Source: Octopus sinensis
Taxonomy: Eukaryota
Assembly: GCF_006345805.1 (NCBI RefSeq)
Contig: NC_043022.1
Span: 25,358,001-25,422,000, forward strand
Direction of reading: 5' to 3'
DNA: 64,000 nucleotides
Of this stretch, positions 3,715 to 64,000 are shown piece by piece. A program made the translations under genes and the position numbers. The notes under the pieces were generated by a model. That model did not search any database. It was given only the letters and a program-made list of their open reading frames with translations, and was not told the DNA's origin. Positions within the stretch are counted from its first letter, which is position 1. Each line of letters starts with the position of its first letter.

Positions 3715-4190
3715 TGTATGTATGTATTTATATATACTTGTGTATATCTGTTTCTTTACTGCACACAAGGAGCTAAACACAGGGGGTACAAACAAGGACA
3801 GACAAACGGATTAAGTCGATTACATCGACCCCAGTGCGTAACTGGTACTTAATTTATCGACCCCGAAAGGATGAAAGGCAAAGTCGACCTCGGCGGAATT
3901 TGAACTCAGAGCGTAACGGCAGACGAAATACGGCTTCGCATTTCGCCCGGCGTGCTAACGGTTCTGCCAAGCTCGCCGCCTTCTGTGTATACGTGTGTAT
4001 ATCATGTGCGTTTCTGTGTTTGTCCTCCCCCACACTGCTTAACAACCGGTGCTGGTTTGTTTACATCCTTGTGAATTAGTAGTTCGGTAAAAGACACTGA
4101 CAGAATAAGTACCAGACTTAAAATGAATACTGAAGCCTTTAAGGCAGTGCGCCCAGCATGGATGGCCGCTGTCCAATGACTGAAACAAAT
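3484..4190 (+). mobile_element. tRNA-derived SINE family A, interrupted by a family B SINE
   Basis: Head gctgtgtggttaagaagc...gttcaatccc and core gcaccttggtcaaatgtcttct; internal TA/TG microsatellite; tail cccagcatgg...aatgactgaaac. Confidence 0.75.
3751..3983 (-). mobile_element. tRNA-derived CORE-like SINE family B
   Basis: Reverse complement of ggcggcgagctggcagaa...gagttcaaattcc...gcctttcatcctttcggggtcgataaa...gtaaagaaa. Confidence 0.9.
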
Positions 4191-8811: not shown

Positions 8812-9251
8812 GGATCTTTTCGGTTTGAACGGCAGTTTTTTCTAGCGGTGTCATATGAAATTGTCACACATAATTATGACCCTAGAATCGATCTATTGCA
8901 TTTCAATCTCTTTTAGGGTTAGGGTTGATTAGGGTTAGGGTTAGGATTAGGGGTGGGGGAAGGCTATCTTTTTTTTCTTCACAAATGTAAATAAACCCAA
9001 TCTGTTTCTTAAACGAGGGACATAGTCATACGGCACAGAATGCTTTTTAACTCAATAGACGTCACTGATTGGTTGAAATTGCAGAAATTGAAGAAAAAAA
9101 AACAACAAATATCTTACAAACTATAGAATTTTCTCAATAAAGCCAAGAGAAAAATATGTTTTATAAACACATTCTACCAGTATACGAAGTTTAAAATTTT
9201 TTAGTTGCCTAGAAATTATGTTAAAAACTGCCGTTCAAACCGAAAAGATCC
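8812..9251. mobile_element. MITE with ~28-bp TIRs (GGATCTTTTCGGTTTGAACGGCAGTTTT) and 8-bp TSD; Merlin-like
   Basis: Perfect TIRs; flanks aatgattg/aattattg (7/8 match); internal degenerate (TTAGGG)n at ~8912-8950; second copy at 18783-19195. Confidence 0.85.
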
Positions 9252-9530: not shown

Positions 9531-9534
9531 TTTA

Positions 9535-9758
9535 TAGGCGCAGGAGTGGCTGCATGGTAAGAAGCTTTCTTCCCAAACACATGGCTCGGGGTTCAGTCCC
9601 ACTGCATAGCACCTTGGGCAAGTGTCTTCTACTATAGCCTCGAGCTGGTCACATCTTTGTGAGTGGATTTGGTAGACGGAAACTGAAAGAAGCCCGTTGT
9701 ATATATATTTATATATGTGCGTGTGTGTGTGTGTGGTGTGTGTGTGGTGTGTGTGCGT

Positions 9759-9838
<80 letters not shown>

Positions 9839-19319: not shown

Positions 19320-19702
19320 GCATAGGAGTGGTTGTGTGGTAAGTAACTTGTTTACCAACCACATGGTTCCGGGTTCAGTCCCACTGCGTGGCACCTTGGG
19401 TAAGTGTCTTCTACTATAGCCTCGGGCAGACCAATGCCTTGTGGGTGGATTTGGTAGACGGAAACTGAAAGAAGCCCGTCGTATATATGTATATATATAT
19501 ATGCGTGTGTGTGTTTGTCCCCTAGCATTGTTTGACAACCGATGCTGGTGTGCTTATGTCGCCGTCACTTAGCGGTTCGGCAAAAGAACCCGATACAATA
19601 AGTACTGGGCTTACAAAAGAATAAGTCCCGGGGTCGAGTTGCTCGACTAAAGGCGGTGCTCCAGCATGGCCGCAGTCAAATGACTGAAACAAGTAAAAGA
19701 GT
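19320..19702 (+). mobile_element. SINE family A
   Basis: Near-consensus full-length copy. Confidence 0.9.
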
Positions 19703-19764
19703 ATATGTGTCCTGAAAAAACAGAATCACCTCAGAACCGATTAACCTTAAGAACTCGAAAGACT

Positions 19765-24163: not shown

Positions 24164-24560
24164 ACAGGCGCAGGAGTGGCTTGTAAGTAGCTTGTTTACT
24201 AACCACATGGTTCCGGGTTCAGTCCCACTGCGTGGCACCTTAGGCAAGTGTCTTCTACTATAGCCTCGGGCCGACCAAAGCCTTGTGAGTGGATATGGTA
24301 GATGGAAACTGAAAGAAGCCCGTCGTATAAATGTATATATATGTATGTGCGTGTATGTTTGTGTGTCTGTGTTTGTCCCTCTAGCATTGCTTGACAACCG
24401 ATGCTGGTGTGTTTATGTCCCCATCACTTAGCGGTTCGGCAAAAGTGACCGATAGAATAAGTACTGGGCTTAGAAAGAATAAGTCCCGGGGTCGATTTGC
24501 TCGATTAAAGGCGGTGCTCCAGCATGGCCGTAGTCAAAAATGACAGAAACAATTAAAAAG
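24164..24560 (+). mobile_element. SINE family A
   Basis: Near-consensus full-length copy. Confidence 0.9.
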
Positions 24561-24816: not shown

Positions 24817-25086
24817 CTCTTTTACTCTTTACTTTTTTACTTGTTTCAGTCATTTGACTGCGGCCATGCTGGAGCACCGCCTTTTAATCGAGCAACTCGA
24901 CCCCGGGACTTATTCTTTTGTAAGCCCAGTACTTATTCTATCGGTCTCTTTTGCCGAATCCACTCACAAGGCTTTGGTCGGCCCGAGGCTATAGTAGAAG
25001 ACACTTGCCCAAGGTGCCACGCAGTGGGACTGAACCCGGAACCATGTGGTTGGTAGACAAGCTACTTACCACATAGCTACTCCTGC
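24817..25086 (-). mobile_element. SINE family A with the central microsatellite region deleted
   Basis: Head and tail are joined at ttgccgaa|tccactcac. Confidence 0.85.
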
Positions 25087-26805: not shown

Positions 26806-27035
26806 TATCTCTTTACTACCCACAAGGGGCTAAACGCAGAGAGGAAAAACAAGTACAGACAAACGGATTAAGTCGATTATATCGACCCCAGTGCGTAACT
26901 GGTACTTATTTAATCGACCCCGAAAGGATGAAAGGCAAAGTCGACCTCGGCGGAATTTGAACTCAGAACGTAGCGGCAGACGAAATACGGCTACGCATTT
27001 CGCCCGGCGTGCTAACGACTCTGCCAGCTTGCCGC
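26806..27035 (-). mobile_element. SINE family B with 15-bp TSD
   Basis: tattttttgtaagcc at 26791-26805 and 27036-27050. Confidence 0.95.
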
Positions 27036-28404: not shown

Positions 28405-28835
28405 TATTACTTTACTACCCACAAGGGGCTAAACACAGAGGAAACAAACAAGGACAGACAAACGGATTAAGTCGATTGCATCGACCCCAGTGCGTAACTG
28501 GTACTTAATTTATCGACCTCGAAAGGATGAAAGGCAAAGTTGACCTCGGCGGAATTTGAACTCAGAACGTAGCAGCAGACGAAATACCGCAAAGCATTTC
28601 GCCCGGCGTGCTAACGTTTCTGCCAGCTCGCCGCCTTCTGTGTATACGTGTTTATATCGTGTGCGTGTCTGTGTTTATCCTCTCCCGCACTGCTTAACAA
28701 CCGGTGTTGGTTTGTTTACATCCTCATGCATTAGTAATTCGGTAAAAGACACTGACAGGATAAGTACCAGACTTAAAATGAATACTGAAGCCTTTAAGGT
28801 AGTGCCCTAACGTTTCTGCCAGCTCGCCGCCTTCA
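28405..28835 (-). mobile_element. Composite SINE B: full copy + ~170 bp captured flank + duplicated head
   Basis: Bounded by ttatagcc (28397-28404, 28836-28843); the inner segment resembles 3984-4150. Confidence 0.75.
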
Positions 28836-30171: not shown

Positions 30172-30830
30172 ATCATTACTTGTGATGAGAAATGGATACT
30201 CTTTGACAACAGCAGGAGAACAGGACGGTGATTAGATGCAGAAGAGTCACCTAAACACTGCCAAAACACACCATTGCACCCTAAAAAGTTAGTGGTCACT
30301 GTATGATGGTCTACGAAGGGAGTTATTGATTATTCATTTTTGCAACAAGGAAAAACAGTAACAGCAACATCGTATTGCCAGGAAATTGATTGTATTCATG
30401 AGAATTTGAAAAAGAAACAACCCAGACGAGCGAACAGACATGGCCCAATTTTGCTCCACGCCAATGAACGACCTCACACTCCTCAAGCTAAGGTTCAAAG
30501 GTTGCAAAGCCTGAATTAGGAGATTTTGCAACATCCGCCCTATTCCCCTGAAATCTCTCCTACTGATCATTACTTATTTAAGTATTTTGAGCTTTTCATA
30601 AGCAATAAAACATTCTTAAATAGAGAAGAGGTAACTGAAGCATTCGGACAGTTTATCACAGCAAAAGATGAACTTTTTAAAAAAAAAGATAGAATATATA
30701 TGACAGAGAAACGTCGGGTAAATGTTATAAATGAACATGGATCATGCTTTGATTAAAGAAATCAATTCTCTAACACTTCTGAAACATTTTATTGTTACCT
30801 TTCAAATATGACATTTCATGGGGAAACGAC

Positions 30831-30836
<6 letters not shown>
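30172..30836 (+). pseudogene. Mariner transposase pseudogene (DD34D domain) with right TIR; a second mariner family
   Basis: IITCDEKWILFDN...LHPKKLVVTV*W...PILLHANERPH...HPPYSPEISPTDHYLF with in-frame stops; ends ggaaacgacctaata into (TA)n. Confidence 0.9.
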
Positions 30837-30892
<56 letters not shown>

Positions 30893-31255: not shown

Positions 31256-32395
31256 TAAACAGTAAAAATAATTACAGACATGGACAAGAACATGAAACAC
31301 CACAGAGACGACACAAGAACCACAGGACGGGACATTCGAAGCCCTCAGTCATCAGTCAAGAACCAGATCATCTTAGCAATTTCGGCTGATTAATCTTGAG
31401 ATTGCTCCGATATGGCCAGCCAGCCAAGGGAAATCTAAGCCAAGCGCATTAGATCCCCTGGAAGAAAGCTTCGAATGTATACAACGCGAGGACGAAAACG
31501 AACGAAGTACATAAACAAAAATACAGAATACGTGACACCAATAAGAATACAAAAACGTAAAAACAATAACGGTAAAAATAAAAAATAAAAAATAAAAAAT
31601 AAACAACAAAACAAAACCAGGACGTGGGACAAGGGTCTTTCGACAGGACGAGTTGAGTATGGGGCTGGCTTGTGAAGTTGTGCCTAATGGCCACGGGGAG
31701 ACGAACAAATACGTGTTGCTTCTGCGGCTGCTGAAAACGAAAAGAGCGCTCAACGGCGGCTAGCTGTCACGTGAGAACAGAAGACAGGAGAAAGGGACAG
31801 ATGAAAAGAGAGAGAAGGTGGACGAGGGAGGAGAAGAAAGAGACAGATCGAGGGGGCTGGAGGTGAGAGAGATAGAGAAACGTAGAAGGGGGGGGGACGG
31901 ATGGAGAGGGAAAGAAAGGAAGGGGAATAAGGGAGGAGAGAGAGAGAGAAAAAGAGACAGATTAAGAGTCGTATCAATGCTAGAGAAAAAATATACTTAT
32001 CGTATAAGGTCAATTGTGGATACGTAGCCGCCGATTATATAGGTAAACAGTAAAAATAATTACAGACATGGACAATAACATGAAACACCACAGAGACGAC
32101 ACAAGAACCACAGGACGGGGCATTCGAAGCCCTCAGTCATCAGTCAAGAACCAGATCATCTTAGCAATTTCGGCTGATTAATCTTGAGATTGCTCCGATA
32201 TGGCCAGCCAGCCAAGAGAAATCTAAGCCATACGACGGGTTTCAGTTTCCGTCTACCAAATCAACTCACAAATCTTTGGTTTACCCGAGGCTATAGTATA
32301 AAAAACTTGCCCAAGATGTCATGCAGTGGGACTCAACCCGGAACCACGTAGCTAGGAAACAGGCTTCTTACCATGCAGTCACTCCTGCGCCTATT
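31015..32395 (-). mobile_element. SINE family A split by an insertion in its TA tract
   Basis: Tail at 31015-31250, head at 32231-32395. Confidence 0.75.
31251..32230 (-). mobile_element. LTR-like miniature element: two ~192-bp direct repeats, 788-bp period, non-coding interior
   Basis: 31251-31442 and 32039-32230 differ at 3 positions by eye. Confidence 0.85.
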
Positions 32396-32678
32396 ATGTG
32401 TGTGTGAGAGAGAGAGTTTGTATGTGTGCGTGTATATATATATATATATACATAATTAATCAATATAGGGTGGCAAAAAATTTTGTAGAATTTTTTTGCC
32501 ACCAGCGGCCTAGTGGGAAAAAATTAAATAGTCATAGACCATTTATAAGTTCAACATCACAATCAAGGAACGGCCATAATAGGCCCTTCACCCACTAGAA
32601 ATAACAGCCAAAGCTTCAACCGCAAAATAACATTAATTCCGCAAATCAGGAGAAAATTAAAAAAACATTTACCCTGTA

Positions 32679-32785
32679 ATTTCTTATACGATGCACCGTT
32701 TCATCTACTGTTTAATGGTAAACTAACCTGATTAAATTAAATCAAGCCAGTCTCCCATAGGCCCTTAGATTCGTCAGTAAGAAAT
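32679..32785 (-). ncRNA. Type I hammerhead ribozyme, copy 1
   Basis: AUUUCUUA-CUGACGA-AUCUA..UAGAU-GAAA-CGG-ugca-UCG-UA-UAAGAAAU; predicted cleavage between 32687 and 32686. Confidence 0.9.
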
Positions 32786-33162
32786 AGCCAGATCGGAACA
32801 GATATTTTCACGAGGCACTTCTGTCCCTGCCTCGGCAATATCTGACCTAAATTTTTCAAATCATCGCACTCGCGCCAAATTTATCGGCAGCAAATAATAT
32901 AAGCCGCCGATTCCATTACGGAATTAACCAGAAAATTCATATTAATCAATATAGGGTGGCAAAAAATTTTGTAGAATTTTTTTGCCACCAGCGGCCTAGT
33001 GGAAAAAATTAAATAGTCATAGACCATTTATAAGTTCAACATCACAATCAAGGAACGGCCATAATAGGCCCTTCACCCACTAGAAATAACAGCCAAAGCT
33101 TCAACCGCAAAATAACATTAATTCCGCAAATCAGGAGAAAATTAAAAAAACAGTTACCTGTA

Positions 33163-33267
33163 ATTTCTTATACGATGCACCGTTTCATCTACTGTTTAAT
33201 GGTAAACTAACTGATTAAATTAAATCAAGCCAGTCTCAATAGGCCCTTAGATTCGTCAGTAAGAAAT
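33163..33267 (-). ncRNA. Type I hammerhead ribozyme, copy 2
   Basis: Core intact; two 1-nt deletions, both in the distal stem II. Confidence 0.88.
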
Positions 33268-33644
33268 AGCCAGATCGGAACAGATATTTTCACGAGGCAC
33301 TTCTGTCCTGCCTCGGCAATATCTGACCTAAAATTTTCAAATCATCGCACTCGCGCCAAATTATCGGCAGCAAATAAATATAAGCCGCCGATTCCATTAC
33401 GGAATTAACCAGAAAATTCATAATTAATCAATATAGGGTGGCAAAAAATTTTGTAGAATATTTTTGCCACAGCGGCCTAGTGGGAAAAAATTAAATAGTC
33501 ATAGACCATTATAAGTTCAACATCACAATCAAGGAACGGCCATAATAGGCCCTTCACCCACTAGAAATAACAGCCAAAGCTTCAACCGCAAAATAACATT
33601 AATTCCGCAAATCAGGAGAAAATTAAAAAAACATTTACCCTGTA

Positions 33645-33751
33645 ATTTCTTATACGATGCACCGTTTCATCTACTGTTTAATGGTAAACTAACCTGATTA
33701 AATTAAATCAAGCCAGTCTCCCATAGGCCCTTAGATTCGTCAGTAAGAAAT
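33645..33751 (-). ncRNA. Type I hammerhead ribozyme, copy 3
   Basis: Core and stems intact. Confidence 0.9.
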
Positions 33752-34132
33752 AGCCAGATCGGAACAGATATTTTCACGAGGCACTTCTGTCCCTGCCTCG
33801 GCAATATCTGACCTAAAATTTTCAAATCATCGCACTCGCGCCAAATTTATCGGCAGCAAATAAATATAAGCCGCCGATTCCATTACGGAATTAACCAGAA
33901 AATTCATAATTAATCAATATAGGGTGGCAAAAAATTTTGTAGAATTTTTTTGCCACCAGCGGCCTAGTGGGAAAAAATTAAATAGTCATAGACCATTTAT
34001 AAGTTCAACATCACAATCAAGGAACGGCCATAATAGGCCCTTCACCCACTAGAAATAACAGCCAAAGCTTCAACCGCAAAATAACATTAATTCCACAAAT
34101 CAGGAGAAAATTAAAAAAACAGTTACCCTGTA

Positions 34133-34239
34133 ATTTCTTATACGATGCACCGTTTCATCTACTGTTTAATGGTAAACTAACCTGATTAAATTAAATCAAG
34201 CCAGTCTTCCATAGGCCCTTAGATTCGTCAGTAAGAAAT
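34133..34239 (-). ncRNA. Type I hammerhead ribozyme, copy 4
   Basis: Core and stems intact. Confidence 0.9.
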
Positions 34240-34618
34240 AGCCAGATCGGAACAGATATTTTCACGAGGCACTTCTGTCCCTGCCTCGGCAATATCTGAC
34301 CTAAAATTTTCAAATCATCGCACTCGCGCCAAATTTATCGGCAGCAAATAATATAAGCCGCCGATTCCATACGGAATTAACCAGAAAATTCATAATTAAT
34401 CAATATAGGGTGGCAAAAAATTTTGTAGAATATTTTTGCCACCAGCGGCCTAGTGGGAAAAAATTAAATAGTCATAGACCATTTATAAGTTCAACATCAC
34501 AATCAAGGAACGGCCATAATAGGCCCTTCACCCACTAGAAATAACAGCCAAAGCTTCAACCGCAAAATAACATTAATTCCGCAAATCAGGAGAAAATTAA
34601 AAAAACATTTACCCTGTA

Positions 34619-34707
34619 ATTTCTTATACGATGCACCGTTTCATCTACTGTTTAATGGTAAACTAACCTGATTAAATTAAATCAAGCCAGTCTTCCATAG
34701 GCCCTTA
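34619..34707 (-). ncRNA. Truncated hammerhead (lacks CUGACGA and the 5' strand of stem I)
   Basis: Cut by the inversion junction at the base of stem II. Confidence 0.8.
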
Positions 34708-35086
34708 CAGGGTAAATGTTTTTTTAATTTTCTCCTGATTTGCGGAATTAATGTTATTTTGCGGTTGAAGCTTTGGCTGTTATTTCTAGTGGGTGAAGGG
34801 CCTATTATGGCCGTTCCTTGATTGTGATGTTGAACTTATAAATGGTCTATGACTATTTAATTTTTTCCCACTAGGCCGCTGGTGGCAAAAAAATTCTACA
34901 AAATTTTTTGCCACCCTATATTGATTAATTATGAATTTTCTGGTTAATTCCGTAATGGAATCGGCGGCTTATATTTATTTGCTGCCGATAAATTTGGCGC
35001 GAGTGCGATGATTTGAAAATTTTAGGTCAGATATTGCCGAGGCAGGGACAGAAGTGCCTCGTGAAAATATCTGTTCCGATCTGGCT

Positions 35087-35193
35087 ATTTCTTACTGACG
35101 AATCTAAGGGCCTATTGAAGACTGGCTTGATTTAATTTAATCAGGTTAGTTTACCATTAAACAGTAGATGAAACGGTGCATCGTATAAGAAAT
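35087..35193 (+). ncRNA. Type I hammerhead ribozyme, inverted-arm copy
   Basis: Stem I 35087-35094/35186-35193; CUGACGA 35095-35101; stem II 35102-35106/35165-35169; GAAA 35170-35173; cleavage after A35185. Confidence 0.9.
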
Positions 35194-35328
35194 TACAGGG
35201 TAAATGTTTTTTTAATTTTCTCCTGATTTGCGGAATTAATGTTATTTTGCGGTTGAAGCTTTGGCTGTTATTTCTAGTGGGTGAAGGGCCTATTATGGCC
35301 GTTCCTTGTATATATATATACATATATA

Positions 35329-35590
35329 CAGGTGTAGCTGTGTGGTAGGAAGCTTGTTTCCCAACAACATGGCGCCAGGTTCCGTCTCACTGCGCGGCAC
35401 CTTGGGCAAGTGTCTTCTACTATAGCTTCGGGCCGACTCCCTGAGTGGATTTGGTAGACGGAAACCGAAAGAAGAGAACGATTGAATAAGTACTAGATTT
35501 ACAAAGAATAAGTTTTGGGGTCGATTCGTACGACTAAAGGCGGAGCTCCAGCATGGCCGCAGTCAAATGACTGAAACAAATAAAAGAATA
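35329..35590 (+). mobile_element. SINE family A with central deletion
   Basis: Head is joined to tail at aaagaagag. Confidence 0.8.
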
Positions 35591-36862
35591 TGTGTGCATG
35601 TTTGTGTGTGTATTTCTATATATTATTAGTTATTAGATTTTTGTAGTTTGATTAGCACTCTGGTTTTTATAATTTTTCCGCTTTTAAAACTTTGCTTTTT
35701 TTTTTCAAATTCCAGGATTCTTCCCCAAAGTCCACAGTCAAATGCCGGATATTATCGATGTCACAGATACAAGAAGGCTTTTATCAAAACAACTTAAACC
35801 AGCTAAAACTGATGTGAAACCAAAAAAAGCGAAAAAAAATTTATATTTAAACAAAATTTACGATGATAATGATGGCTGGAATATAATTTTCGAAACGTTT
35901 GATGGAGGATTAAAAATCTAATTTCTCCCCAACTTTAAAGTTAAATTTTAGATCTCCATCATTACTCTTAGTATTTTGGTTGTTGTTAGTGTTGTCATTA
36001 TGTTCTTGTTGTTATTACTGTTGTTGTTGCTGCTGATGATGATGATGATATTATTACGGTGTTATTATTCTGCGAATATTATTATTTTTTCTGTTATCCT
36101 TATTTATTTTTGAATCGTTTGTTGTTGTTTGTGTGTTTTGTTTATATATTTCTCAGTTTTCTTGTAATATATCCCCATACATATCCCAACTCGTTATGGC
36201 CTCAAGAATTTATTTCGCACTTTTTTTTAAATTTTAAAGCTATTTCTTGGATGCTGGAAGGAGTATTTTTGGTCAATTTTACGGGTGGGGAGCCAGAGAG
36301 ATTTTGATTTTTCTCATTTTTGCGGCTTTAATTTTATGCATGTTTGTGTTATACTTTTCTTACCATTTAATTTTTTTTTTTGTGTGTGTATCTTTTTATT
36401 TCAAAAACTTATTTTTAAAGGGGGCGGGATGCAGGGAAGTCCTAGTTCTTTCTTTTCTATATGAATAGATGATGAATAGATTAACATTTTTTCCCCCCTT
36501 ATTTTTCGTTTTAAAGAAAATTTTTCCAACCTTCGAAATGCGCCAACCTCGACTATCCACCTCACCACTCTTCTTTCTCCTTCATCCATAAATGTCTCCC
36601 ATATTGTTTTTAATTTATTATTGTTTAGGAATTTATATTTATTTCTTATATTTTTTTATTCTCACATATATTTAATTAAACAACTTAAAACAGCACAATT
36701 TTCTTAAAATGCAAAAATGCAAGCGACAAACCAATAAAACGAAAAAACGTCACATAAAGATCTGAATATCTATTCATAATGTCTCTTATACATTTATTCA
36801 AATATTTATTTCTTACGTTATCAACGTTATTATGAAATCATATTGTATACAGACACACACAC

Positions 36863-40787: not shown

Positions 40788-42030
40788 CATCATGATTATT
40801 ATTATTATATTATTATTATTATTATTACAAACATCAGTAGCAAACAAGAAAAGCGACGGCAGCCAAAAAACTTCATAGCACGTGGAGTATGTCCATCACC
40901 ATCATCATCGCCAACCACAACGACGCCACCACAATGGCCAACAAGCACCATTATACTACCAGTAATACTTCACCAAAGCCACTATCGCCAACTACACAGC
41001 ATTACAACCATCATCATCAGTATCGGTGGTACTTCTACCAACATCACGGCTACCACCAACGACACCATTACTACAAATATATCCAACATTTATCGTCGCC
41101 ATCAGCCGCCATCAGCAACGCCATTACAGTTATTATCCCACCAATCACCATCACCGCCAACTTCCATCATAACCGTCAATATCAACCACCATCACCCCCA
41201 GCATCACCACCACCACCACCATCACTGTAATCATTTCCAATACCACCACAATCACTACCATCATCATCATTATCATCATCACCACCACCACCACCATCAC
41301 TGCAATCATCTCCAATACCACCAAAATCACTACCATCATCATCATTATCATCACCACCACCATCACTAATCATCTCCAATACCACCACAATCACTACCAT
41401 CATCATCACCAACGCCACCACCATCGCTGCAATCCCCATCTCCAATACCACCACAACAACTACCATCATCATCATTATCATCATCACCAACGCCACCACC
41501 ATCGCTGCAATCCCCATCTCCAATACCACCACAACCACTACCATCATCATCATTATCATCATCACCACCACCACCACCACCACCATCGCTGCAATCATTT
41601 CCAATACCACCACAACCACTACCATCATCATCATTATCATCATCACCAACGTCACCACCATCGTTGCAATCCCCATCTCCAATACCACCACAACCACTAC
41701 CATCATCATCATCATCATCACCAACGCCACCACCATCGCTGCAATCCCCATCTCCAATACCACCACAACCACTACCATCATCATCATCATCATCACCAAC
41801 GCCACTACCATCATCATCATCATCATCACCACCAACGCCACCACCATCGCTGCAATCCCCATCTCCAATACCACCATAACCACTACCATCATCATCATCA
41901 TCATCTTCCTCACCAGCTTCACCGCAACCATCACTCTCCATTATCTTTCTTAGCAAAGCCATTACCACCACTACCACCACCACCACCACCACCACCAACA
42001 CCACCACCACCACTACCGCCGCCATCACTA
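40735..42030. repeat. (TAT)n plus (CAT/CAC)-based minisatellite with a ~60-70-bp higher-order unit
   Basis: Repeated caccatcgctgcaatccccatctccaataccaccacaaccactaccatcatcatc at 41150-41900. Confidence 0.9.
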
Positions 42031-42509
42031 CCAACACCAAATCATGGCTGAACTTTCGCTGCTAAATAATATACGCCATATTAATAATGTCTAAAAAAAA
42101 TCTTAATGTGATCATTATGTAAGTGTACCCATAATCCTCAATGGATGACGGCTCACCTAAATTCTCTTTTGGAGTTTTTCATGTTGATGTTGTTTCCGGA
42201 TATTTGTTAGCATTGTTGGTATTATTGCTGATATTTTTAATATTCCACTACGCATGATTCGCCAGCAAGTAAGAAATTGTGTTGAGTAATCGTATATGAG
42301 CTTCTGGTAGAGCGCCGTTTGTAGGAGTTATATATATATATATATATACATATATGTATAAGTCAATCTTCTTTATATGTATATATATATATGTGTGTGT
42401 ATATATATATATGTATGTGTGTGTATATATATATATATGTATGTATGTGTGTGTATATATATATATGTATGTATGTGTGTGTATATATATATATGTATGT
42501 ATGTGTGTG

Positions 42510-46450: not shown

Positions 46451-46680
46451 TATTTCTTTACTACCCACAAGGGGCTAAACATAGAGAGAACAAACAAGGA
46501 CAGACAAACGGATTAAGTCGATTATATTAACCCCAGTGCGTAACTGGTACTCAATTTATCGACCCCGAAAGGATGAAAGGCAAAGTCGCCCTCAGCGGAA
46601 TTTGAACTCAGAACGTTGCGACAGACGAAATACTGCTAAGCATTTCACCCGGCATGCTAACGTTTCTGCCACTCACCGCC
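46451..46680 (-). mobile_element. SINE family B nested in a SINE microsatellite region
   Basis: Family match; tacacc on both sides; SINE A tail follows at 46681-46865. Confidence 0.85.
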
Positions 46681-47122
46681 TACACCACTTGACAACCGAT
46701 GCTTATGTGGTTTACGTCCTAGTAACTTAACGGTTCGGCAAAAGACACTGATAGAATAAGTATCAAGCTTAACAAAAGAATAAGTATTGGGGTTGATTCA
46801 TTCGACTAAAGCTTCTCTTAGGCGGTGCTCCAGCAGGGCCACAGTGTAATGACTGAAACAGGGTGAAAGACACGCGCATGCGCATGCGCACGCACGCACA
46901 CACAGACAGACAGGCAGAGCCGTTGATTCTGTCCATTGCTACTCAGAGTTCTCTTTCCCAAGTGATCGTTCACCTTGACATTTACCTGGCGGAAAACTCC
47001 GAGGAACAACGGAGTGAATCAACAGCTGCCTCCGATGAATATAAACCCTTGCAGCCTTTATTGAGTACTTTTTTCGTTTTATTTGCAGCACCACCGCCCA
47101 AAAGAGAAACATGCATATTAAT

Positions 47123-47247
47123 ACGTACGTACATGGAAACGTACGTACATGGAAACGTACGTACATGGAAACGTACGTACATGGAAACGTACGTACATGG
47201 AAACGTACGTACATGGAAACGTACGTACATGGAAACGTACGTACATG
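47123..47247. repeat. 16-bp minisatellite (ACGTACGTACATGGAA) x ~7.7
   Basis: Perfect 16-bp period. Confidence 0.95.
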
Positions 47248-49634: not shown

Positions 49635-49807
49635 AGGCGATGTTGTTGCTTGTGTGGTAAGTAGCTTGCTAACTAACCACATGGTTCCGGGTTCAGTCCC
49701 ACTGCGTGGCATCTTGAGCAAGTGTCTTCTGCTATAGCCACGAGCCTACCAATGTCTTGTGAGTGGATTTGGTATACGGAAACTGAAAGAAGCCTGTCGT
49801 ATATATG

Positions 49808-49844
<37 letters not shown>

Positions 49845-50086
49845 TTGTGTGTCTGTGTTTGTGTGTCTGTGTGTTTGTGTCTGTGTTTGTCCCCCCTAGC
49901 ATTGCTTGACAACCGATGCTGGTGTGTTTACGTCCCCGTCACTTAGCGGTTCGGCAAAATAGACCAATAGAATAAGTACTGGGCTTACAAAGAATAAGTC
50001 CTGGGGTCGATTTGCTCGACTAAAGGTGGTGCTCCAGCATGGCCGCAGTCAAATGACTGAAACAAGTAAAAGAGTAAGGAGTAAAA

Positions 50087-50473: not shown

Positions 50474-50702
50474 GGCGGCGAGCTGGCAGAACCGTTAGCA
50501 CGCTGGGCGAAATGCGTAGCCGTATTTCGTCTGCCTTTACGTTCTGAGTTCAAATTCCGCCGAGGTCGACTTTGCCTTTCATCCTTTCGGGGTCGATAAA
50601 TTAAGTACCAGTTACGCACTGGGGTCGATGTAATCGACTTAATCCGTTTGTCTGTCCTTGTTTGTCTCCTCTATGTTTAGCCCCTTGTGGATAATAAAGA
50701 AA
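50474..50702 (+). mobile_element. SINE family B
   Basis: Near-consensus copy. Confidence 0.9.
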
Positions 50703-50789
50703 CAGATATCCAGCAGGCTCAGTCTCCCTGAGTGCCGTGTTGTAGGATGGACATGTATTTTGTTCTTTTTTATCTTTTACGTGTTCCAG

Positions 50790-52460: not shown

Positions 52461-53016
52461 GTTAGCGGTAATTCGTCTGCCGCTACGTTCTGAGTTCAAA
52501 TTCCGCCGAGGTCGACTTTGCCTTTCATCCTTTCGGGGTCAATAAATTAAGTACCAGTTACGAACTGGGGTCGATATAATCGTCTTAATCCGTTTGTCTG
52601 TCCTTGTTTGTCCACTCTGTGTTTAGCCCCTTGTGGGTAGTAAAGAAATAGGTACTTCGTCTGCCGCTACGTTCTGAGTTCAAATTCCGCCGAGGTCGAC
52701 TTTGCCTTTCATCCTTTCGGGGTCGATTAATTAAGTACCAGTTACGCACTGGGGTCGATATCATCGACTTAATCCGTTTGTCTGTCCTTGTTTGTCCTCT
52801 CTGTGTTTAACCCCTTGTGGGTAGCAAAGAAATAGGTATTTCGTCTGCCGCTACGTTCTGAGTTCAAATTCCGCCGAGGTCGACTTTGCCTTTCATCCTT
52901 TCGGGGTCGATTAAATAAGTACCAGTTACGCACTGGCGTCGATATGATCGACTTAATCTGCTTGTCTGTCCTTGTTTGTCCTCTGTGTTTAGCCCCTTGT
53001 GGGTAGTAAAGAAATA
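52461..53016 (+). mobile_element. Tandem trimer of headless SINE B units (184-bp period)
   Basis: tcgtctgccgctacg at 52473, 52657 and 52841. Confidence 0.95.
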
Positions 53017-54801: not shown

Positions 54802-55032
54802 GGCGGCGAGCTGGCAGAAACGTTAGCATGCCGGGTGAAATGCGTAGCCGTATTTCGTCTGCCGTTACGTTCTGAGTTCAAATTCCGCCGTGGTCGACTT
54901 TGCCTTTCATCCTTTCGGGGTCGATGAATTAAGTACCAGTGACGCACTGGGGTTGATGCAATTGACTTAATCCGTTTGTCTGTACTTGTTTGTCCCCTCT
55001 ATGTTTAGCCCCTTTTGGGTAGTAAAGAAATA
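54802..55032 (+). mobile_element. SINE family B with 18-20-bp TSD
   Basis: ggtataatgctgcgatgtgg at 54784-54803 and 55033-55052. Confidence 0.95.
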
Positions 55033-55288: not shown

Positions 55289-55794
55289 ATCATCATTGTT
55301 CGACCGTGTTCGAGACAATGGAATTTACTATGTTACGAGACAATGGAATTTACTATGTAAATTTACTATTTACGGTCCATCATAGCATTACGGAGGTTCT
55401 GTTCCTGGATGCCTGTATCCCTGGAGATTACATCAGGGTAGGATAGTGTGCGCCCTCTGGTATCGCTAGCTGATGGCTTCCAGAGGAGAAGAGTCGAAAC
55501 TTCCTCGTTTTCAGCTCTACAACAATGTCCAGCAAACTGGACTCTTCTACCTTTCACAAGAGATGATACAGGTGGTAATTTCCCATATATTTGTACTTTG
55601 GTTGGATGACGCTTCCACGAGAATTTTGAGCTCTCATAAGAGGCAGTGTAAGTTCATCCAACCGCCTCTCAAGCTTCTTTGATAACGTCCAGGTTTCTGA
55701 GCCATATAGTAGATTTGGTTCGACTGTGGCTATGAAGATTTTAAGTTTGAAATCTCTACTTAGATTTGATGACCAGATCTTATACATATCATTG
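55289..55794 (-). pseudogene. RTE-clade LINE, 3' segment
   Basis: NDMYKIWSSNLSRDFKLKIFIATVEPNLLYGSETWTL; RVQFAGHCCRA; GRTLSYPDVISRDTG; short TGA tail. Confidence 0.9.
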
Positions 55795-63484: not shown

Positions 63485-63802
63485 TAGGCGCAGCTCGCTT
63501 CCCAACAACATGGTTCCGAGTTCAGTCCCACTGCATGACACATTTGGCAAGTGTTTTCAACTGTAGCCTCGGGCCGACTAAAGCTTTGTAAGTGGATTTG
63601 GTAGAAAGAAACTAAAAGAAGCCCGTCGTACAGACTGAAAGAAACCCGATGCTAATGTGTTTATGTCCCAGTAATTTAGCGGTTCGGCAGAAAAAGAACA
63701 ATAGAATAAGTACTAGGCTTCTAAAGAAGAAGTCCTGGAATCGACTTCTTCGACAAAAAAACGCACCTTTAAGGCGGTGCTCCAGCATGGCCGCAGTCAA
63801 AA
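63485..63802 (+). mobile_element. SINE family A (diverged)
   Basis: Head, core and tail present. Confidence 0.8.
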
Positions 63803-64000
63803 GAATGTATACACACACACAGAATGGAAATCACGAGATTCTTTATTAATCAGAACGATCGTTTCAACCCATCTTGCATGAATCCCTTTTATGGTGCATC
63901 CCTCGCTACAGATGTGTTTTGTCCGGTGACTTTTCAAAACTGTATCGTACCCAATAAAATCTTTTACTCATTCCATCTATTTTATTAATACTGTTACCCT

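What the first reader, a model, noticed from the sequence alone, without database searches (positions are those of the whole stretch)
32451..35308. Tandem array of canonical hammerhead ribozymes: candidate cephalopod retrozyme / ~486-nt circular RNA system
Seen: a non-coding ~486-bp unit (periods 486, 482, 486, 486). Each complete copy folds as a type I hammerhead with all core bases: stem I AUUUCUUA/UAAGAAAU (8 bp), CUGACGA, stem II base AUCUA/UAGAU, GAAA, stem III ACGG-ugca-UCGU and a GUA cleavage triplet. Five intact copies (four minus, one plus). Substitutions and indels between units spare the core. Established: tandem type I hammerheads define newt satellite 2, Schistosoma SM-alpha, Dolichopoda pDo500 and metazoan non-LTR retrozymes, whose multimeric transcripts self-cleave into monomers that circularise. 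Inference: this is an active or recently active retrozyme family yielding ~486-nt linear and circular RNAs. I do not know of one described from a cephalopod, but could not check.
Basis: partly seen in the sequence, partly recalled or inferred. Interest (0 to 1): 0.95.

Follow-up and report, generated by a model that had tools for sequence, protein, structure and literature searches.

The report
Octopus hammerhead-ribozyme tandem repeat (retrozyme)
A ~486-bp non-coding repeat in an octopus-type genome carries a self-cleaving hammerhead ribozyme motif in every unit and looks like a young copy of the known "retrozyme" class of circular-RNA retroelements: a new example of a known kind, not a new kind.

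Summary
A 4.6-unit tandem array lies on the minus strand (32448-34707). It is joined head-to-head to a 1.24-unit inverted arm (34705-35308). Five units carry a complete type I hammerhead core with helices I, II and III; a sixth copy is cut at the junction. A descriptor scan finds this motif nowhere else in the window. None of 400 dinucleotide shuffles of the window reaches its strength.

It is not "canonical". No Rfam hammerhead model reports it, even at E<=10 on 146 nt. Helix II is 5 bp plus a ~58-nt extension, its closing pair is A-U, and helix III is weak as a hairpin but strong as a dimer.

The anatomy fits a metazoan non-LTR retrozyme:
- 482-488-nt units with 37% G+C and no coding capacity;
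- a strongly structured predicted circular monomer;
- both outer ends in (TA)n;
- two arms with their 5' ends at the centre, which is the partial-tandem-plus-inverted-copy architecture of Penelope-like elements.

SINE families shared with Octopus sinensis support an octopod origin.

Not shown: cleavage, circles, other genomic copies, covariation (all 31 helix pairs are invariant in the five copies).

Retrozymes are known in molluscs, and 235 Hammerhead_1 hits are listed for the giant squid genome. I therefore call this a new member of a known kind, of moderate interest.

The parts
32430..32450 (.). Left (TA)n microsatellite abutting the 3' end of the minus-strand arm; presumed target sequence
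   Evidence: Sequence read; (TA)n is the stated preferred target of Penelope-like elements (PMC8557442)
32448..34707 (-). Main arm of the array. In sense orientation it runs from unit position 408 (at 34707) through four full units to unit position 239 (at 32448). Unit lengths are 486, 488, 482 and 484 nt.
   Evidence: TRF; blastn of the monomer; cleavage-site spacing
34619..34707 (-). 5'-truncated hammerhead at the inversion junction. It has the distal helix II, GAAA, helix III, the GUA site at 34627 and the helix I 3' strand. It lacks the helix I 5' strand, CUGACGA and the first three bases of the helix II 5' strand.
34133..34239 (-). Complete hammerhead motif m1; predicted cleavage after A34141
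33645..33751 (-). Complete hammerhead motif m2; predicted cleavage after A33653
33163..33267 (-). Complete hammerhead motif m3, with two 1-nt deletions in the helix II extension; predicted cleavage after A33171
32679..32785 (-). Complete hammerhead motif m4; predicted cleavage after A32687
34705..34707 (.). 3-nt overlap (TTA) shared by both arms at the head-to-head junction; microhomology at the join of the two 5' ends
   Evidence: I1 arm starts at 34705, I6 arm ends at 34707
34705..35308 (+). Inverted arm, running from unit position 8 to 488 (34705-35185) and then 1 to 123 (35186-35308); 5'-truncated at the centre, 3' end at the right flank
35087..35193 (+). Complete hammerhead motif on the plus strand. 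Helix I is 35087-35094 paired with 35186-35193. CUGACGA is 35095-35101. The helix II base is 35102-35106 paired with 35165-35169, and its extension is 35107-35164, containing a 14-bp hairpin with four G-U pairs. GAA is 35170-35172. Helix III with its UGCA loop is 35173-35184. A17 is 35185.
35309..35328 (.). Right (TA)n-rich microsatellite abutting the 3' end of the plus arm
32240..32387 (-). Flanking SINE copy with its head facing the insertion; context only, not part of the element
   Evidence: I11, 76% complementary to 35329-35432
35329..35595 (+). Flanking SINE copy with its head facing the insertion; context only. The family has at least 12 copies in the window and occurs in O. sinensis loci.

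Best explanation
This is a young insertion of a non-autonomous, non-coding retroelement of the metazoan non-LTR retrozyme class, in an octopod genome.

Proposed mechanism (inferred from what is known of the class):
1. Read-through transcription of the array gives a multimeric RNA.
2. The type I hammerhead in each unit cuts after the A of GUA. It may act as a single motif, or, because helix III is weak and nearly palindromic, as a double hammerhead formed by two units.
3. [quoted passage not shown]
4. A host tRNA-type ligase circularises the monomers.
5. A Penelope-like element's reverse transcriptase/GIY-YIG endonuclease cuts a (TA)n microsatellite. It then copies the circular or multimeric RNA by target-primed, rolling-circle reverse transcription from both DNA ends.
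6. The result is two tandem arms whose 3' ends abut the target and whose 5' ends are joined at the centre through a 3-nt microhomology.

At this locus, only the main arm could release monomers, and only three of them, bounded by its four complete ribozymes. The inverted arm has a single ribozyme.

Shown here: the array, the motif and its non-chance nature, the architecture, the target, the lack of coding capacity, and the octopod context.

Inferred: transcription, cleavage, circularisation and the mobilising enzyme.
For: - Array and inverted arm.
- All core nucleotides and three helices are present in five copies, and the motif occurs nowhere else in the window.
- 0 of 400 window shuffles reach the observed strength.
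- The ribozyme-constrained fold is only 2.1 kcal/mol above the MFE, both on 107 nt (-22.9 vs -25.0) and on 150 nt (-27.4 vs -29.5).
- Helix I continues after a 3x2 internal loop with 4 more bp. Helix II has an internal loop 5 bp from the core. These are plausible sites for the helix I / helix II contact.
- The helix III hairpin scores -1.2 kcal/mol, against -19.5 for the intermolecular duplex. This is the same situation as in newt and PLE hammerheads that act as dimers (PMC7761336).
- G+C is 37%. The circular monomer MFE is -145.3 kcal/mol with z = -5.9 and 62% of bases paired.
- No ORF exceeds 77 aa stop-to-stop, and the unit peptides have no protein relatives.
- Both outer ends lie in (TA)n, and the 5'-truncated arms sit head-to-head with a TTA overlap. 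This matches the published PLE architecture of partial tandems plus an inverted 5'-truncated copy with a (TA)n target bias (PMC8557442).
- Retrozymes are proposed to be PLE-dependent or PLE-derived (PMC7229834; preprint).
- Recently active Penelope-like families exist in Octopus vulgaris: 31 families and 336 insertions (PMC13282606).
- The copies are 97-99% identical, so the insertion is young.
Against: - No Rfam hammerhead model reports the motif at gathering score, or at E<=10 even on a 146-nt slice.
- Helix II carries an unusual ~58-nt extension, and its closing pair is A-U rather than the usual G-C.
- There is no covariation evidence; all 31 helix pairs are invariant in the five copies.
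- No second locus of the family was found. This covers the rest of the window, 41 kb of O. sinensis plus 21 kb of ENA contigs, JGI metagenome, IMG/VR and GTDB scans, and the protein collection via unit ORFs.
- Multi-copy dispersal, expression, cleavage and circles are therefore all untested.
- The antisense strand has the same folding z-score, so there is no strand-specific structural excess overall.
- The inverted arm could be a post-insertion rearrangement or an assembly artefact.
Confidence: 0.68

Rival explanations
1. This is a dead satellite. The ~486-bp tandem repeat once derived from a ribozyme-bearing element but is now amplified and maintained only at the DNA level by unequal crossing-over, replication slippage and inversion. 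The hammerhead is a non-functional fossil and no circular RNA is made.
For: - There is no evidence of selection on the ribozyme. Variable sites are as frequent in the ribozyme domain as elsewhere: 3 of 17 in 107 of 488 nt.
- There is no covariation.
- Rfam models do not report the motif.
- No other copies were found.
- Variants alternate between odd and even units at unit positions 19 and 195. This fits DNA-level duplication of a dimer.
Against: - All five copies keep every core nucleotide and all helices intact.
- The copies are 97-99% identical, so the array is young.
- The 3'-out/5'-in head-to-head geometry, with a microhomology join and (TA)n at both ends, is what target-primed reverse transcription predicts. 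Unequal crossing-over does not predict it.
Confidence: 0.15
2. This is a piece of an autonomous Penelope-like element rather than a separate non-autonomous family. The units would be tandem pseudo-LTRs (solo pLTR array) of a PLE whose RT/GIY-YIG ORF is simply absent from this copy.
For: - PLE pLTRs carry type I hammerheads, occur in tandem with inverted 5'-truncated copies, and target (TA)n (PMC8557442).
- Xenopus retrozymes are sister to PLE pLTRs (preprint).
- Penelope-like elements are recently active in Octopus.
Against: - No RT or GIY-YIG coding sequence lies in or next to the array.
- PLE hammerheads are described as minimal variants with almost no helix III (PMC7229834, PMC7761336). This one has a 4-bp helix III and long helices I and II.
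- Four and a half regular units without an ORF fit a non-autonomous element.
Confidence: 0.1
3. The resemblance is chance. An unrelated tandem repeat happens to contain a hammerhead-like string, amplified five-fold by the repeat itself.
For: - The five copies are one evolutionary event, so the motif counts once.
- Rfam gives no hit.
- Helix II is atypical.
- Genome-wide, a relaxed descriptor would match by chance many times; it gave 0.035 hits per 64-kb shuffle.
Against: - 0 of 400 shuffles reach the observed strength (8/5/4 bp), and 1 of 400 reaches 5/4/3.
- The motif sits in exactly the type of element where type I hammerheads are known: a short AT-rich non-coding tandem repeat with PLE-type insertion features. 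That context is independent of the motif itself.
Confidence: 0.05

Closest known systems
Metazoan non-LTR retrozymes (Cervera & de la Pena 2020, PMC7229834), e.g. Mytilus galloprovincialis, Acropora millepora and Ambystoma mexicanum repeats
   Same: - A type I hammerhead sits in each unit of a short non-coding tandem repeat.
- G+C is low (37% here).
- There are no LTR, PBS or PPT features.
- The array has a few units; most families have <=7 (preprint).
- The predicted circular monomer is strongly structured.
- The host lineage also carries Penelope-like elements.
   Different: - The unit of 482-488 nt is above the 170-400 nt quoted for invertebrate circles, although it is within the 51-972 bp family range of the 2026 preprint.
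- Helix II has a ~58-nt extension and an A-U closing pair.
- Rfam models miss the motif.
- Expression, circles and copy number are unknown here.
Penelope-like elements (Penelope/Poseidon, Neptune and others) and their pLTR hammerheads (PMC4209133, PMC8557442)
   Same: - The arrangement is a partial tandem with an inverted 5'-truncated copy at the upstream end.
- The insertion lies in a (TA)n microsatellite, so no target-site duplication can be read.
- The element carries a type I hammerhead.
- A weak, near-palindromic helix III would allow dimeric action.
   Different: - There is no RT or GIY-YIG ORF.
- The hammerhead is not the minimal PLE variant.
- No 30-40-bp tail is recognisable at either end.
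Newt satellite 2 / salamander HHR_Amex repeats, Schistosoma Sm-alpha, Dolichopoda pDo500
   Same: [quoted passage not shown]
- In the newt, helix III is closed by a palindromic tetraloop, and the ribozyme is more active as a dimer.
   Different: - There is no sequence similarity.
- Those hammerheads have short helix II hairpins and are recognised by Rfam Hammerhead_1.
- Their copy numbers are very high, whereas only one locus is seen here.
Hammerhead_1 loci annotated in the giant squid genome (235 loci; PMC6962438)
   Same: These are type I hammerhead motifs in a cephalopod genome.
   Different: Those loci were found by the Rfam model, which does not report this motif, so they are likely a different family. 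No tandem or retrozyme analysis was reported for them.

Membership tests
Hammerhead ribozyme, type I | Conserved core: C3 U4 G5 A6 N7 G8 A9, G12 A13 A14, A15.1-U16.1, and H17 not G | tested here: met
   CUGACGA ... GAA ... A(15.1)CGG-UGCA-UCGU(16.1) A17 is identical in five copies.
Hammerhead ribozyme, type I | Three helices radiating from the core, with helix I open-ended | tested here: met
   Helix I has 8 bp, then 4 more after a 3x2 internal loop. The helix II base has 5 bp. Helix III has 4 bp including one G-U.
Hammerhead ribozyme, type I | Helix II closed by G10.1-C11.1 (usual but not obligatory), with a short helix II hairpin | tested here: not met
   The 10.1-11.1 pair is A-U. Helix II carries a ~58-nt extension with a 14-bp hairpin.
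Hammerhead ribozyme, type I | Scores against the curated covariance models (Rfam hammerhead families) | tested here: not met
   No hammerhead hit at gathering score, at E<=10 on 4 kb, or on 146 nt. The long helix II insertion probably causes this. A trimmed sequence could not be submitted to test that.
Hammerhead ribozyme, type I | Helices supported by compensatory changes across copies | tested here: inconclusive
   All 31 pairs are invariant in the five local copies. No diverged copies were obtainable.
Hammerhead ribozyme, type I | Tertiary contact between helix I and helix II loops | not testable with these tools
   Internal loops exist in helix I (GCU/UA, 8 bp from the core) and in helix II (5 bp from the core). 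No 3D or biochemical test is available.
Hammerhead ribozyme, type I | Mg2+-dependent self-cleavage 3' of H17 | not testable with these tools
   This needs in vitro transcription.
Metazoan non-LTR retrozyme | Type I hammerhead in each unit of a short tandem repeat (about 150-450 bp; family range 51-972 bp) | tested here: met
   Units are 482-488 bp, with 4.6 + 1.24 copies and one motif per unit. Size ranges come from PMC7229834 and the preprint.
Metazoan non-LTR retrozyme | Low G+C, non-coding, no LTR/PBS/PPT | tested here: met
   G+C is 37%. The longest stop-to-stop frame is 77 aa, and it has no relatives among 5.8 billion proteins. The unit has no terminal repeats other than the tandem units themselves.
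Metazoan non-LTR retrozyme | Stable, highly self-paired predicted circular monomer | tested here: met
   The circular MFE is -145.3 kcal/mol, with z = -5.9 against 200 shuffles and 62% of bases paired. The fold is branched rather than rod-like.
Metazoan non-LTR retrozyme | Dispersed multi-copy family in the genome | not testable with these tools
   No cephalopod genome can be searched by DNA here. No copies were found elsewhere in the window or in 41 kb of O. sinensis.
Metazoan non-LTR retrozyme | Expressed as linear and circular monomer RNAs | not testable with these tools
   No transcriptome access.
Metazoan non-LTR retrozyme | Co-occurrence with autonomous Penelope-like elements in the host | not tested
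   Literature only. There are 31 recently active Penelope-like families in Octopus vulgaris (PMC13282606), and Penelope elements occur in the giant squid. There is no PLE coding sequence in this window.
Penelope-like element insertion architecture | Partial tandem with an inverted 5'-truncated copy at the upstream end | tested here: met
   The arms 32448-34707 (-) and 34705-35308 (+) have their 5' ends at the centre, at unit positions 408 and 8, with a 3-nt overlap. The published description is in PMC8557442.
Penelope-like element insertion architecture | Insertion into a microsatellite, typically (TA)n | tested here: met
   (TA)n directly abuts both outer ends.
Penelope-like element insertion architecture | RT plus GIY-YIG endonuclease ORF (autonomous element) | tested here: not met
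   No such ORF lies in or near the array. The element is therefore non-autonomous at best.

The most novel reading that the evidence does not exclude
The family would be an active cephalopod circular-RNA retrozyme. Its hammerhead has a long, structured helix II extension (5 bp plus internal loop plus a 14-bp G-U-rich hairpin) and therefore escapes all curated hammerhead models. That would imply a hidden population of extended-helix-II hammerheads in cephalopod and other invertebrate genomes. The head-to-head array would also be a direct genomic footprint of twin-primed, rolling-circle reverse transcription of a circular RNA by Penelope-like-element machinery at a (TA)n site.
Probability: 0.3. 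Interest if true: 0.6.

Novelty: new member of a known kind. Interest (0 to 1): 0.4.

Why it matters
- If the family is active, it would add cephalopods to the animals that make abundant ribozyme-processed circular RNAs.
- It would provide a natural hammerhead with an unusually long helix II. That is useful for testing how far the helix I / helix II contact can be displaced, and for widening search descriptors.
- The locus also gives a clean example linking retrozymes to Penelope-like-element integration: a (TA)n target, 3'-out/5'-in twin arms and a microhomology join. That link is so far argued mainly from co-occurrence and pLTR similarity.
- It does not change the current picture of what these elements are.

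Tried and rejected
- **Rfam.** I ran Rfam on the whole window at gathering score, on 4 kb at E<=10, and on 146 nt at E<=10. No hammerhead hit appeared. The only hits were weak miRNA-like and other hairpin matches, which I dismissed.
- **Unit ORFs as handles to other copies.** Two exact look-ups and one search with three concatenated unit peptides found nothing.
- **DNA pattern scans.** I scanned JGI metagenomes (twice), IMG/VR and GTDB genomes. The only match, in a Bacilli MAG (L001), has no CUGANGA upstream and lies in ordinary coding-like sequence, so it is chance.
- **Other copies nearby.** blastn of the unit against the rest of the window, O. sinensis loci L004/L005 and ENA contigs L002/L003 gave no copies.
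- **PLE-type minimal hammerheads.** A scan of the window found none.
- **Covariation.** A count on the five copies is uninformative because every pair is invariant.
- **Strand asymmetry of folding.** The sense RNA is 38 kcal/mol more stable, but both strands have z = -5.9. The difference is compositional and is not evidence for sense-strand selection.
- **Exact ORF look-up for the source genome.** It was not on record.
- **tRNA scan.** It found none.
Full report
**1. The observation**

Tandem Repeats Finder reports one long-period array in the window, at 32451-34707. It has period 486, 4.6 copies, 97% matches and score 4367.

The repeat search shows that 34705-35308 is the reverse complement of array units at 99-100% identity (I1-I6). 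blastn with one monomer gives the exact layout. I number the unit from the predicted cleavage site.
- The minus-strand arm runs, in sense orientation, from unit position 408 (at 34707) through four full units to position 239 (at 32448).
- The plus-strand arm runs from position 8 (34705) to 488 (35185), and then 1-123 (35186-35308).

Units between successive GUA sites are 486, 488, 482 and 484 nt.

CUGACGA starts at 34231, 33743, 33259 and 32777 on the minus strand and at 35095 on the plus strand. H17 is at 34141, 33653, 33171, 32687 and 35185. A sixth copy at the junction (34619-34707, minus) lacks the helix I 5' strand and CUGACGA.

**2. Is it more than chance?**

I wrote a type I hammerhead descriptor with these elements:
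- helix I directly flanking the core;
- CUGANGA;
- helix II with up to about 90 nt enclosed;
- GAA;
- A15.1-U16.1 opening helix III;
- H17 not G.

It matches only the five array sites on both strands of the window. This holds even when relaxed to helices of 3, 3 and 2 bp.

In 400 dinucleotide-preserving shuffles of the whole window:
- 12 had any relaxed hit;
- 1 had a hit at 5/4/3 bp;
- none reached the observed 8/5/4 bp.

The five copies are one evolutionary event, so the motif counts once. Even once, it is far beyond chance for a 64-kb window. A scan for the minimal helix-III-less variants typical of Penelope-like elements found none in the window.

**3. How good a hammerhead is it?**

All invariant core positions are correct. 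Helix I has 8 perfect pairs, then a 3x2 internal loop (GCU/UA), then 4 more pairs. Helix III is A-U, C-G, G-C, G-U closed by UGCA.

Helix II is unusual:
- It has five pairs (AUCUA/UAGAU) closed by A10.1-U11.1 instead of the usual G-C.
- An internal loop follows.
- A 14-bp hairpin with four G-U pairs comes next.
- About 58 nt in all lie between the two strands of the helix II base.

The ribozyme-constrained fold lies 2.1 kcal/mol above the MFE, so the active fold is accessible. The values are -22.9 against -25.0 on 107 nt and -27.4 against -29.5 on 150 nt.

Helix III alone is marginal (-1.2 kcal/mol). The near-palindromic ACGGUGCAUCGU forms a -19.5 kcal/mol duplex between two copies. This is the situation of newt and PLE hammerheads that cleave as dimers (PMC7761336).

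Against this, no Rfam hammerhead model reports the motif. That holds at gathering score, at E<=10 on 4 kb, and on a 146-nt slice. The long helix II insertion is the likely reason, but I could not submit a trimmed sequence to prove it. 'Canonical' is therefore not justified.

**4. Variation among copies**

The alignment of all units has 17 variable columns in 488. Ten of them are 1-nt indels, and most of those are in unit m3. Three variable columns lie in the 107-nt ribozyme domain, all in the helix II extension. None lies in the core or the helix bases, where about 1.7 would be expected by chance.

All 31 proposed pairs are invariant, so covariation is zero by construction. The 'core is spared' argument therefore has no statistical weight.

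Variants at unit positions 19 and 195 alternate between odd and even units. This is a weak hint of a dimeric template or a dimer duplication.

**5. The unit as a whole**

G+C is 37%. The longest stop-to-stop frame is 77 aa. Exact look-ups and a search of 5.8 billion proteins with the three longest unit peptides found nothing.

Folded as a circle, the sense monomer has an MFE of -145.3 kcal/mol, with z = -5.9 against 200 shuffles and 62% of bases paired. The antisense circle has -107.2 and the same z. The unit is strongly structured, but the strand difference is compositional.

**6. Architecture and target**

Both outer ends of the insertion abut (TA)n: 32430-32450 on the left and 35309-35328 on the right.

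The sense strand of the left arm reads leftwards and that of the right arm reads rightwards. Both arms therefore have their 3' ends at the flanks and their 5'-truncated ends at the centre. There they share three bases, TTA, at 34705-34707.

This geometry is expected if both 3'-OH ends of a cut target primed reverse transcription of a multimeric or circular RNA, and the two cDNAs were then joined by microhomology. It is also the published hallmark of Penelope-like elements: partial tandems, an inverted 5'-truncated copy at the upstream end, and a (TA)n bias that hides target-site duplications (PMC8557442).

Retrozymes have been proposed to depend on PLEs (PMC7229834). A 2026 preprint finds them sister to PLE pLTRs in Xenopus. 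No RT or GIY-YIG coding sequence is present in or near the array, so the element is non-autonomous.

The array lies between two diverged SINE copies whose heads face it; they are 76% complementary (I11).

**7. Source organism**

The window is microsatellite- and SINE-rich, with no clear genes.
- A mariner remnant and an RTE-like remnant have their best named relatives in Octopus sinensis.
- Two O. sinensis loci fetched from GCA_006345805.1 carry both SINE families of the window at 80-92% identity.

An octopod origin is supported. The species is not determined.

**8. Other copies**

None could be obtained.
- The unit is absent from the rest of the window.
- It is absent from 41 kb of O. sinensis and 21 kb of ENA contigs.
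- It is absent from the JGI metagenome, IMG/VR and GTDB scans. The single GTDB match is a chance hit without a core.

No cephalopod genome or transcriptome can be searched by DNA with these tools. Copy number, dispersal, covariation and expression therefore remain open.

**9. Most likely mechanism**

The steps below are inferred from the class.
1. Read-through transcription of the main arm yields a multimer.
2. Four complete ribozymes cut after A34141, A33653, A33171 and A32687.
3. Three monomers of 488, 482 and 484 nt are released.
4. A host ligase circularises them.
5. PLE machinery reinserts rolling-circle cDNA at (TA)n sites.

The unit next to the junction cannot be released in cis, because its upstream ribozyme is truncated. 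The inverted arm has one ribozyme and releases nothing. Transcription across the junction would give a roughly 600-bp hairpin RNA.

**10. Comparison and novelty**

The element meets the structural criteria of metazoan non-LTR retrozymes (PMC7229834). Its unit size falls inside the 51-972 bp family range, and most families have <=7 units.

I found no description of a cephalopod retrozyme in the searchable literature. However, 235 Hammerhead_1 loci are listed for the giant squid genome (PMC6962438), a mussel retrozyme is characterised, and Penelope-like elements are recently active in Octopus vulgaris.

My verdict is a new member of a known kind. It has two mildly unusual traits: an extended helix II that escapes Rfam, and a very clean twin-arm PLE-type insertion.

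Noticed in passing
window 32240-32387 (-) and 35329-35595 (+); other copies e.g. 19323-19706, 24183-24558, 24835-25085, 49651-50077, 9533-9764, 63492-63807: A ~265-bp SINE-like family has at least 12 copies in the window. Many copies are split into two halves by an internal microsatellite. Two diverged copies (76% complementary) sit head-to-head around the ribozyme array. The family is also present in Octopus sinensis loci at about 80-84% identity.
   Followed up: partly
window 52467-53016; dispersed copies at 3744-3982, 26806-27033, 28405-28637, 46451-46681, 50477-50712, 54805-55032: A second SINE-like unit of 184 bp, with a tRNA-like start, occurs both as a 3-copy tandem (94% matches) and as dispersed single copies. 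It is about 88-92% identical to a copy in O. sinensis locus L004. ARAGORN calls no tRNA in the window.
   Followed up: partly
window 32687-34626 (units m1-m4 and partial m5): Variants at unit positions 19 (A/C) and 195 (T/A) alternate between odd and even units. This hints at a 2-unit higher-order repeat, from a dimeric RNA template or duplication of a dimer. Most of the 1-nt indels, 7 of 10 columns, are in unit m3 (33171-33652) and could be homopolymer assembly errors.
   Followed up: partly
window 34619-35308 with 33530-34707: Read-through transcription across the head-to-head junction would give an RNA with roughly 600-nt perfectly complementary arms. This is a possible source of double-stranded RNA or small RNAs against the family.
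   Followed up: no
window 34797-34807 and 35109-35119 (plus arm; same positions in each unit): The 11-mer AAGGGCCTATT occurs twice per unit. One copy is in the internal loop of the helix II extension. The other is in the small hairpin GGCCUAUUAUGGCC, about 100 nt after the cleavage site. It may be an internal duplication or a shared binding motif.
   Followed up: no
window 30173-30886 (+): A mariner/Tc1-type transposase remnant matches Pfam Transposase_1 at E = 1.8e-10. Its frame is interrupted by a stop codon (two reading-frame pieces, 30307-30516 and 30520-30753). It is 79% identical at the DNA level to an O. sinensis gene annotated 'SETMAR-like'.
   Followed up: partly
window 55369-55793 (-): This is a remnant of the C-terminal part of a non-LTR (RTE-like) retrotransposon ORF. 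It is 90% identical in DNA to a short contig of ENA assembly ERZ27289496, and it has many 60-80% identical protein relatives on ENA contigs that carry RVT_1.
   Followed up: partly
window 47123-47247: A perfect (100% matches) 16-bp tandem repeat ACGTACGTACATGGAA is present in 7.8 copies. It is unusually clean compared with the other microsatellites in the window.
   Followed up: no
window 8913-8952: A short interstitial run of the telomere-type hexamer TTAGGG (about 7 copies, imperfect).
   Followed up: no
window 41185-42040: A complex minisatellite with nested periods of 33, 75, 78, 111 and 159 bp, built from ACC/ATC-rich units. It produces long artefactual ORFs on both strands.
   Followed up: no
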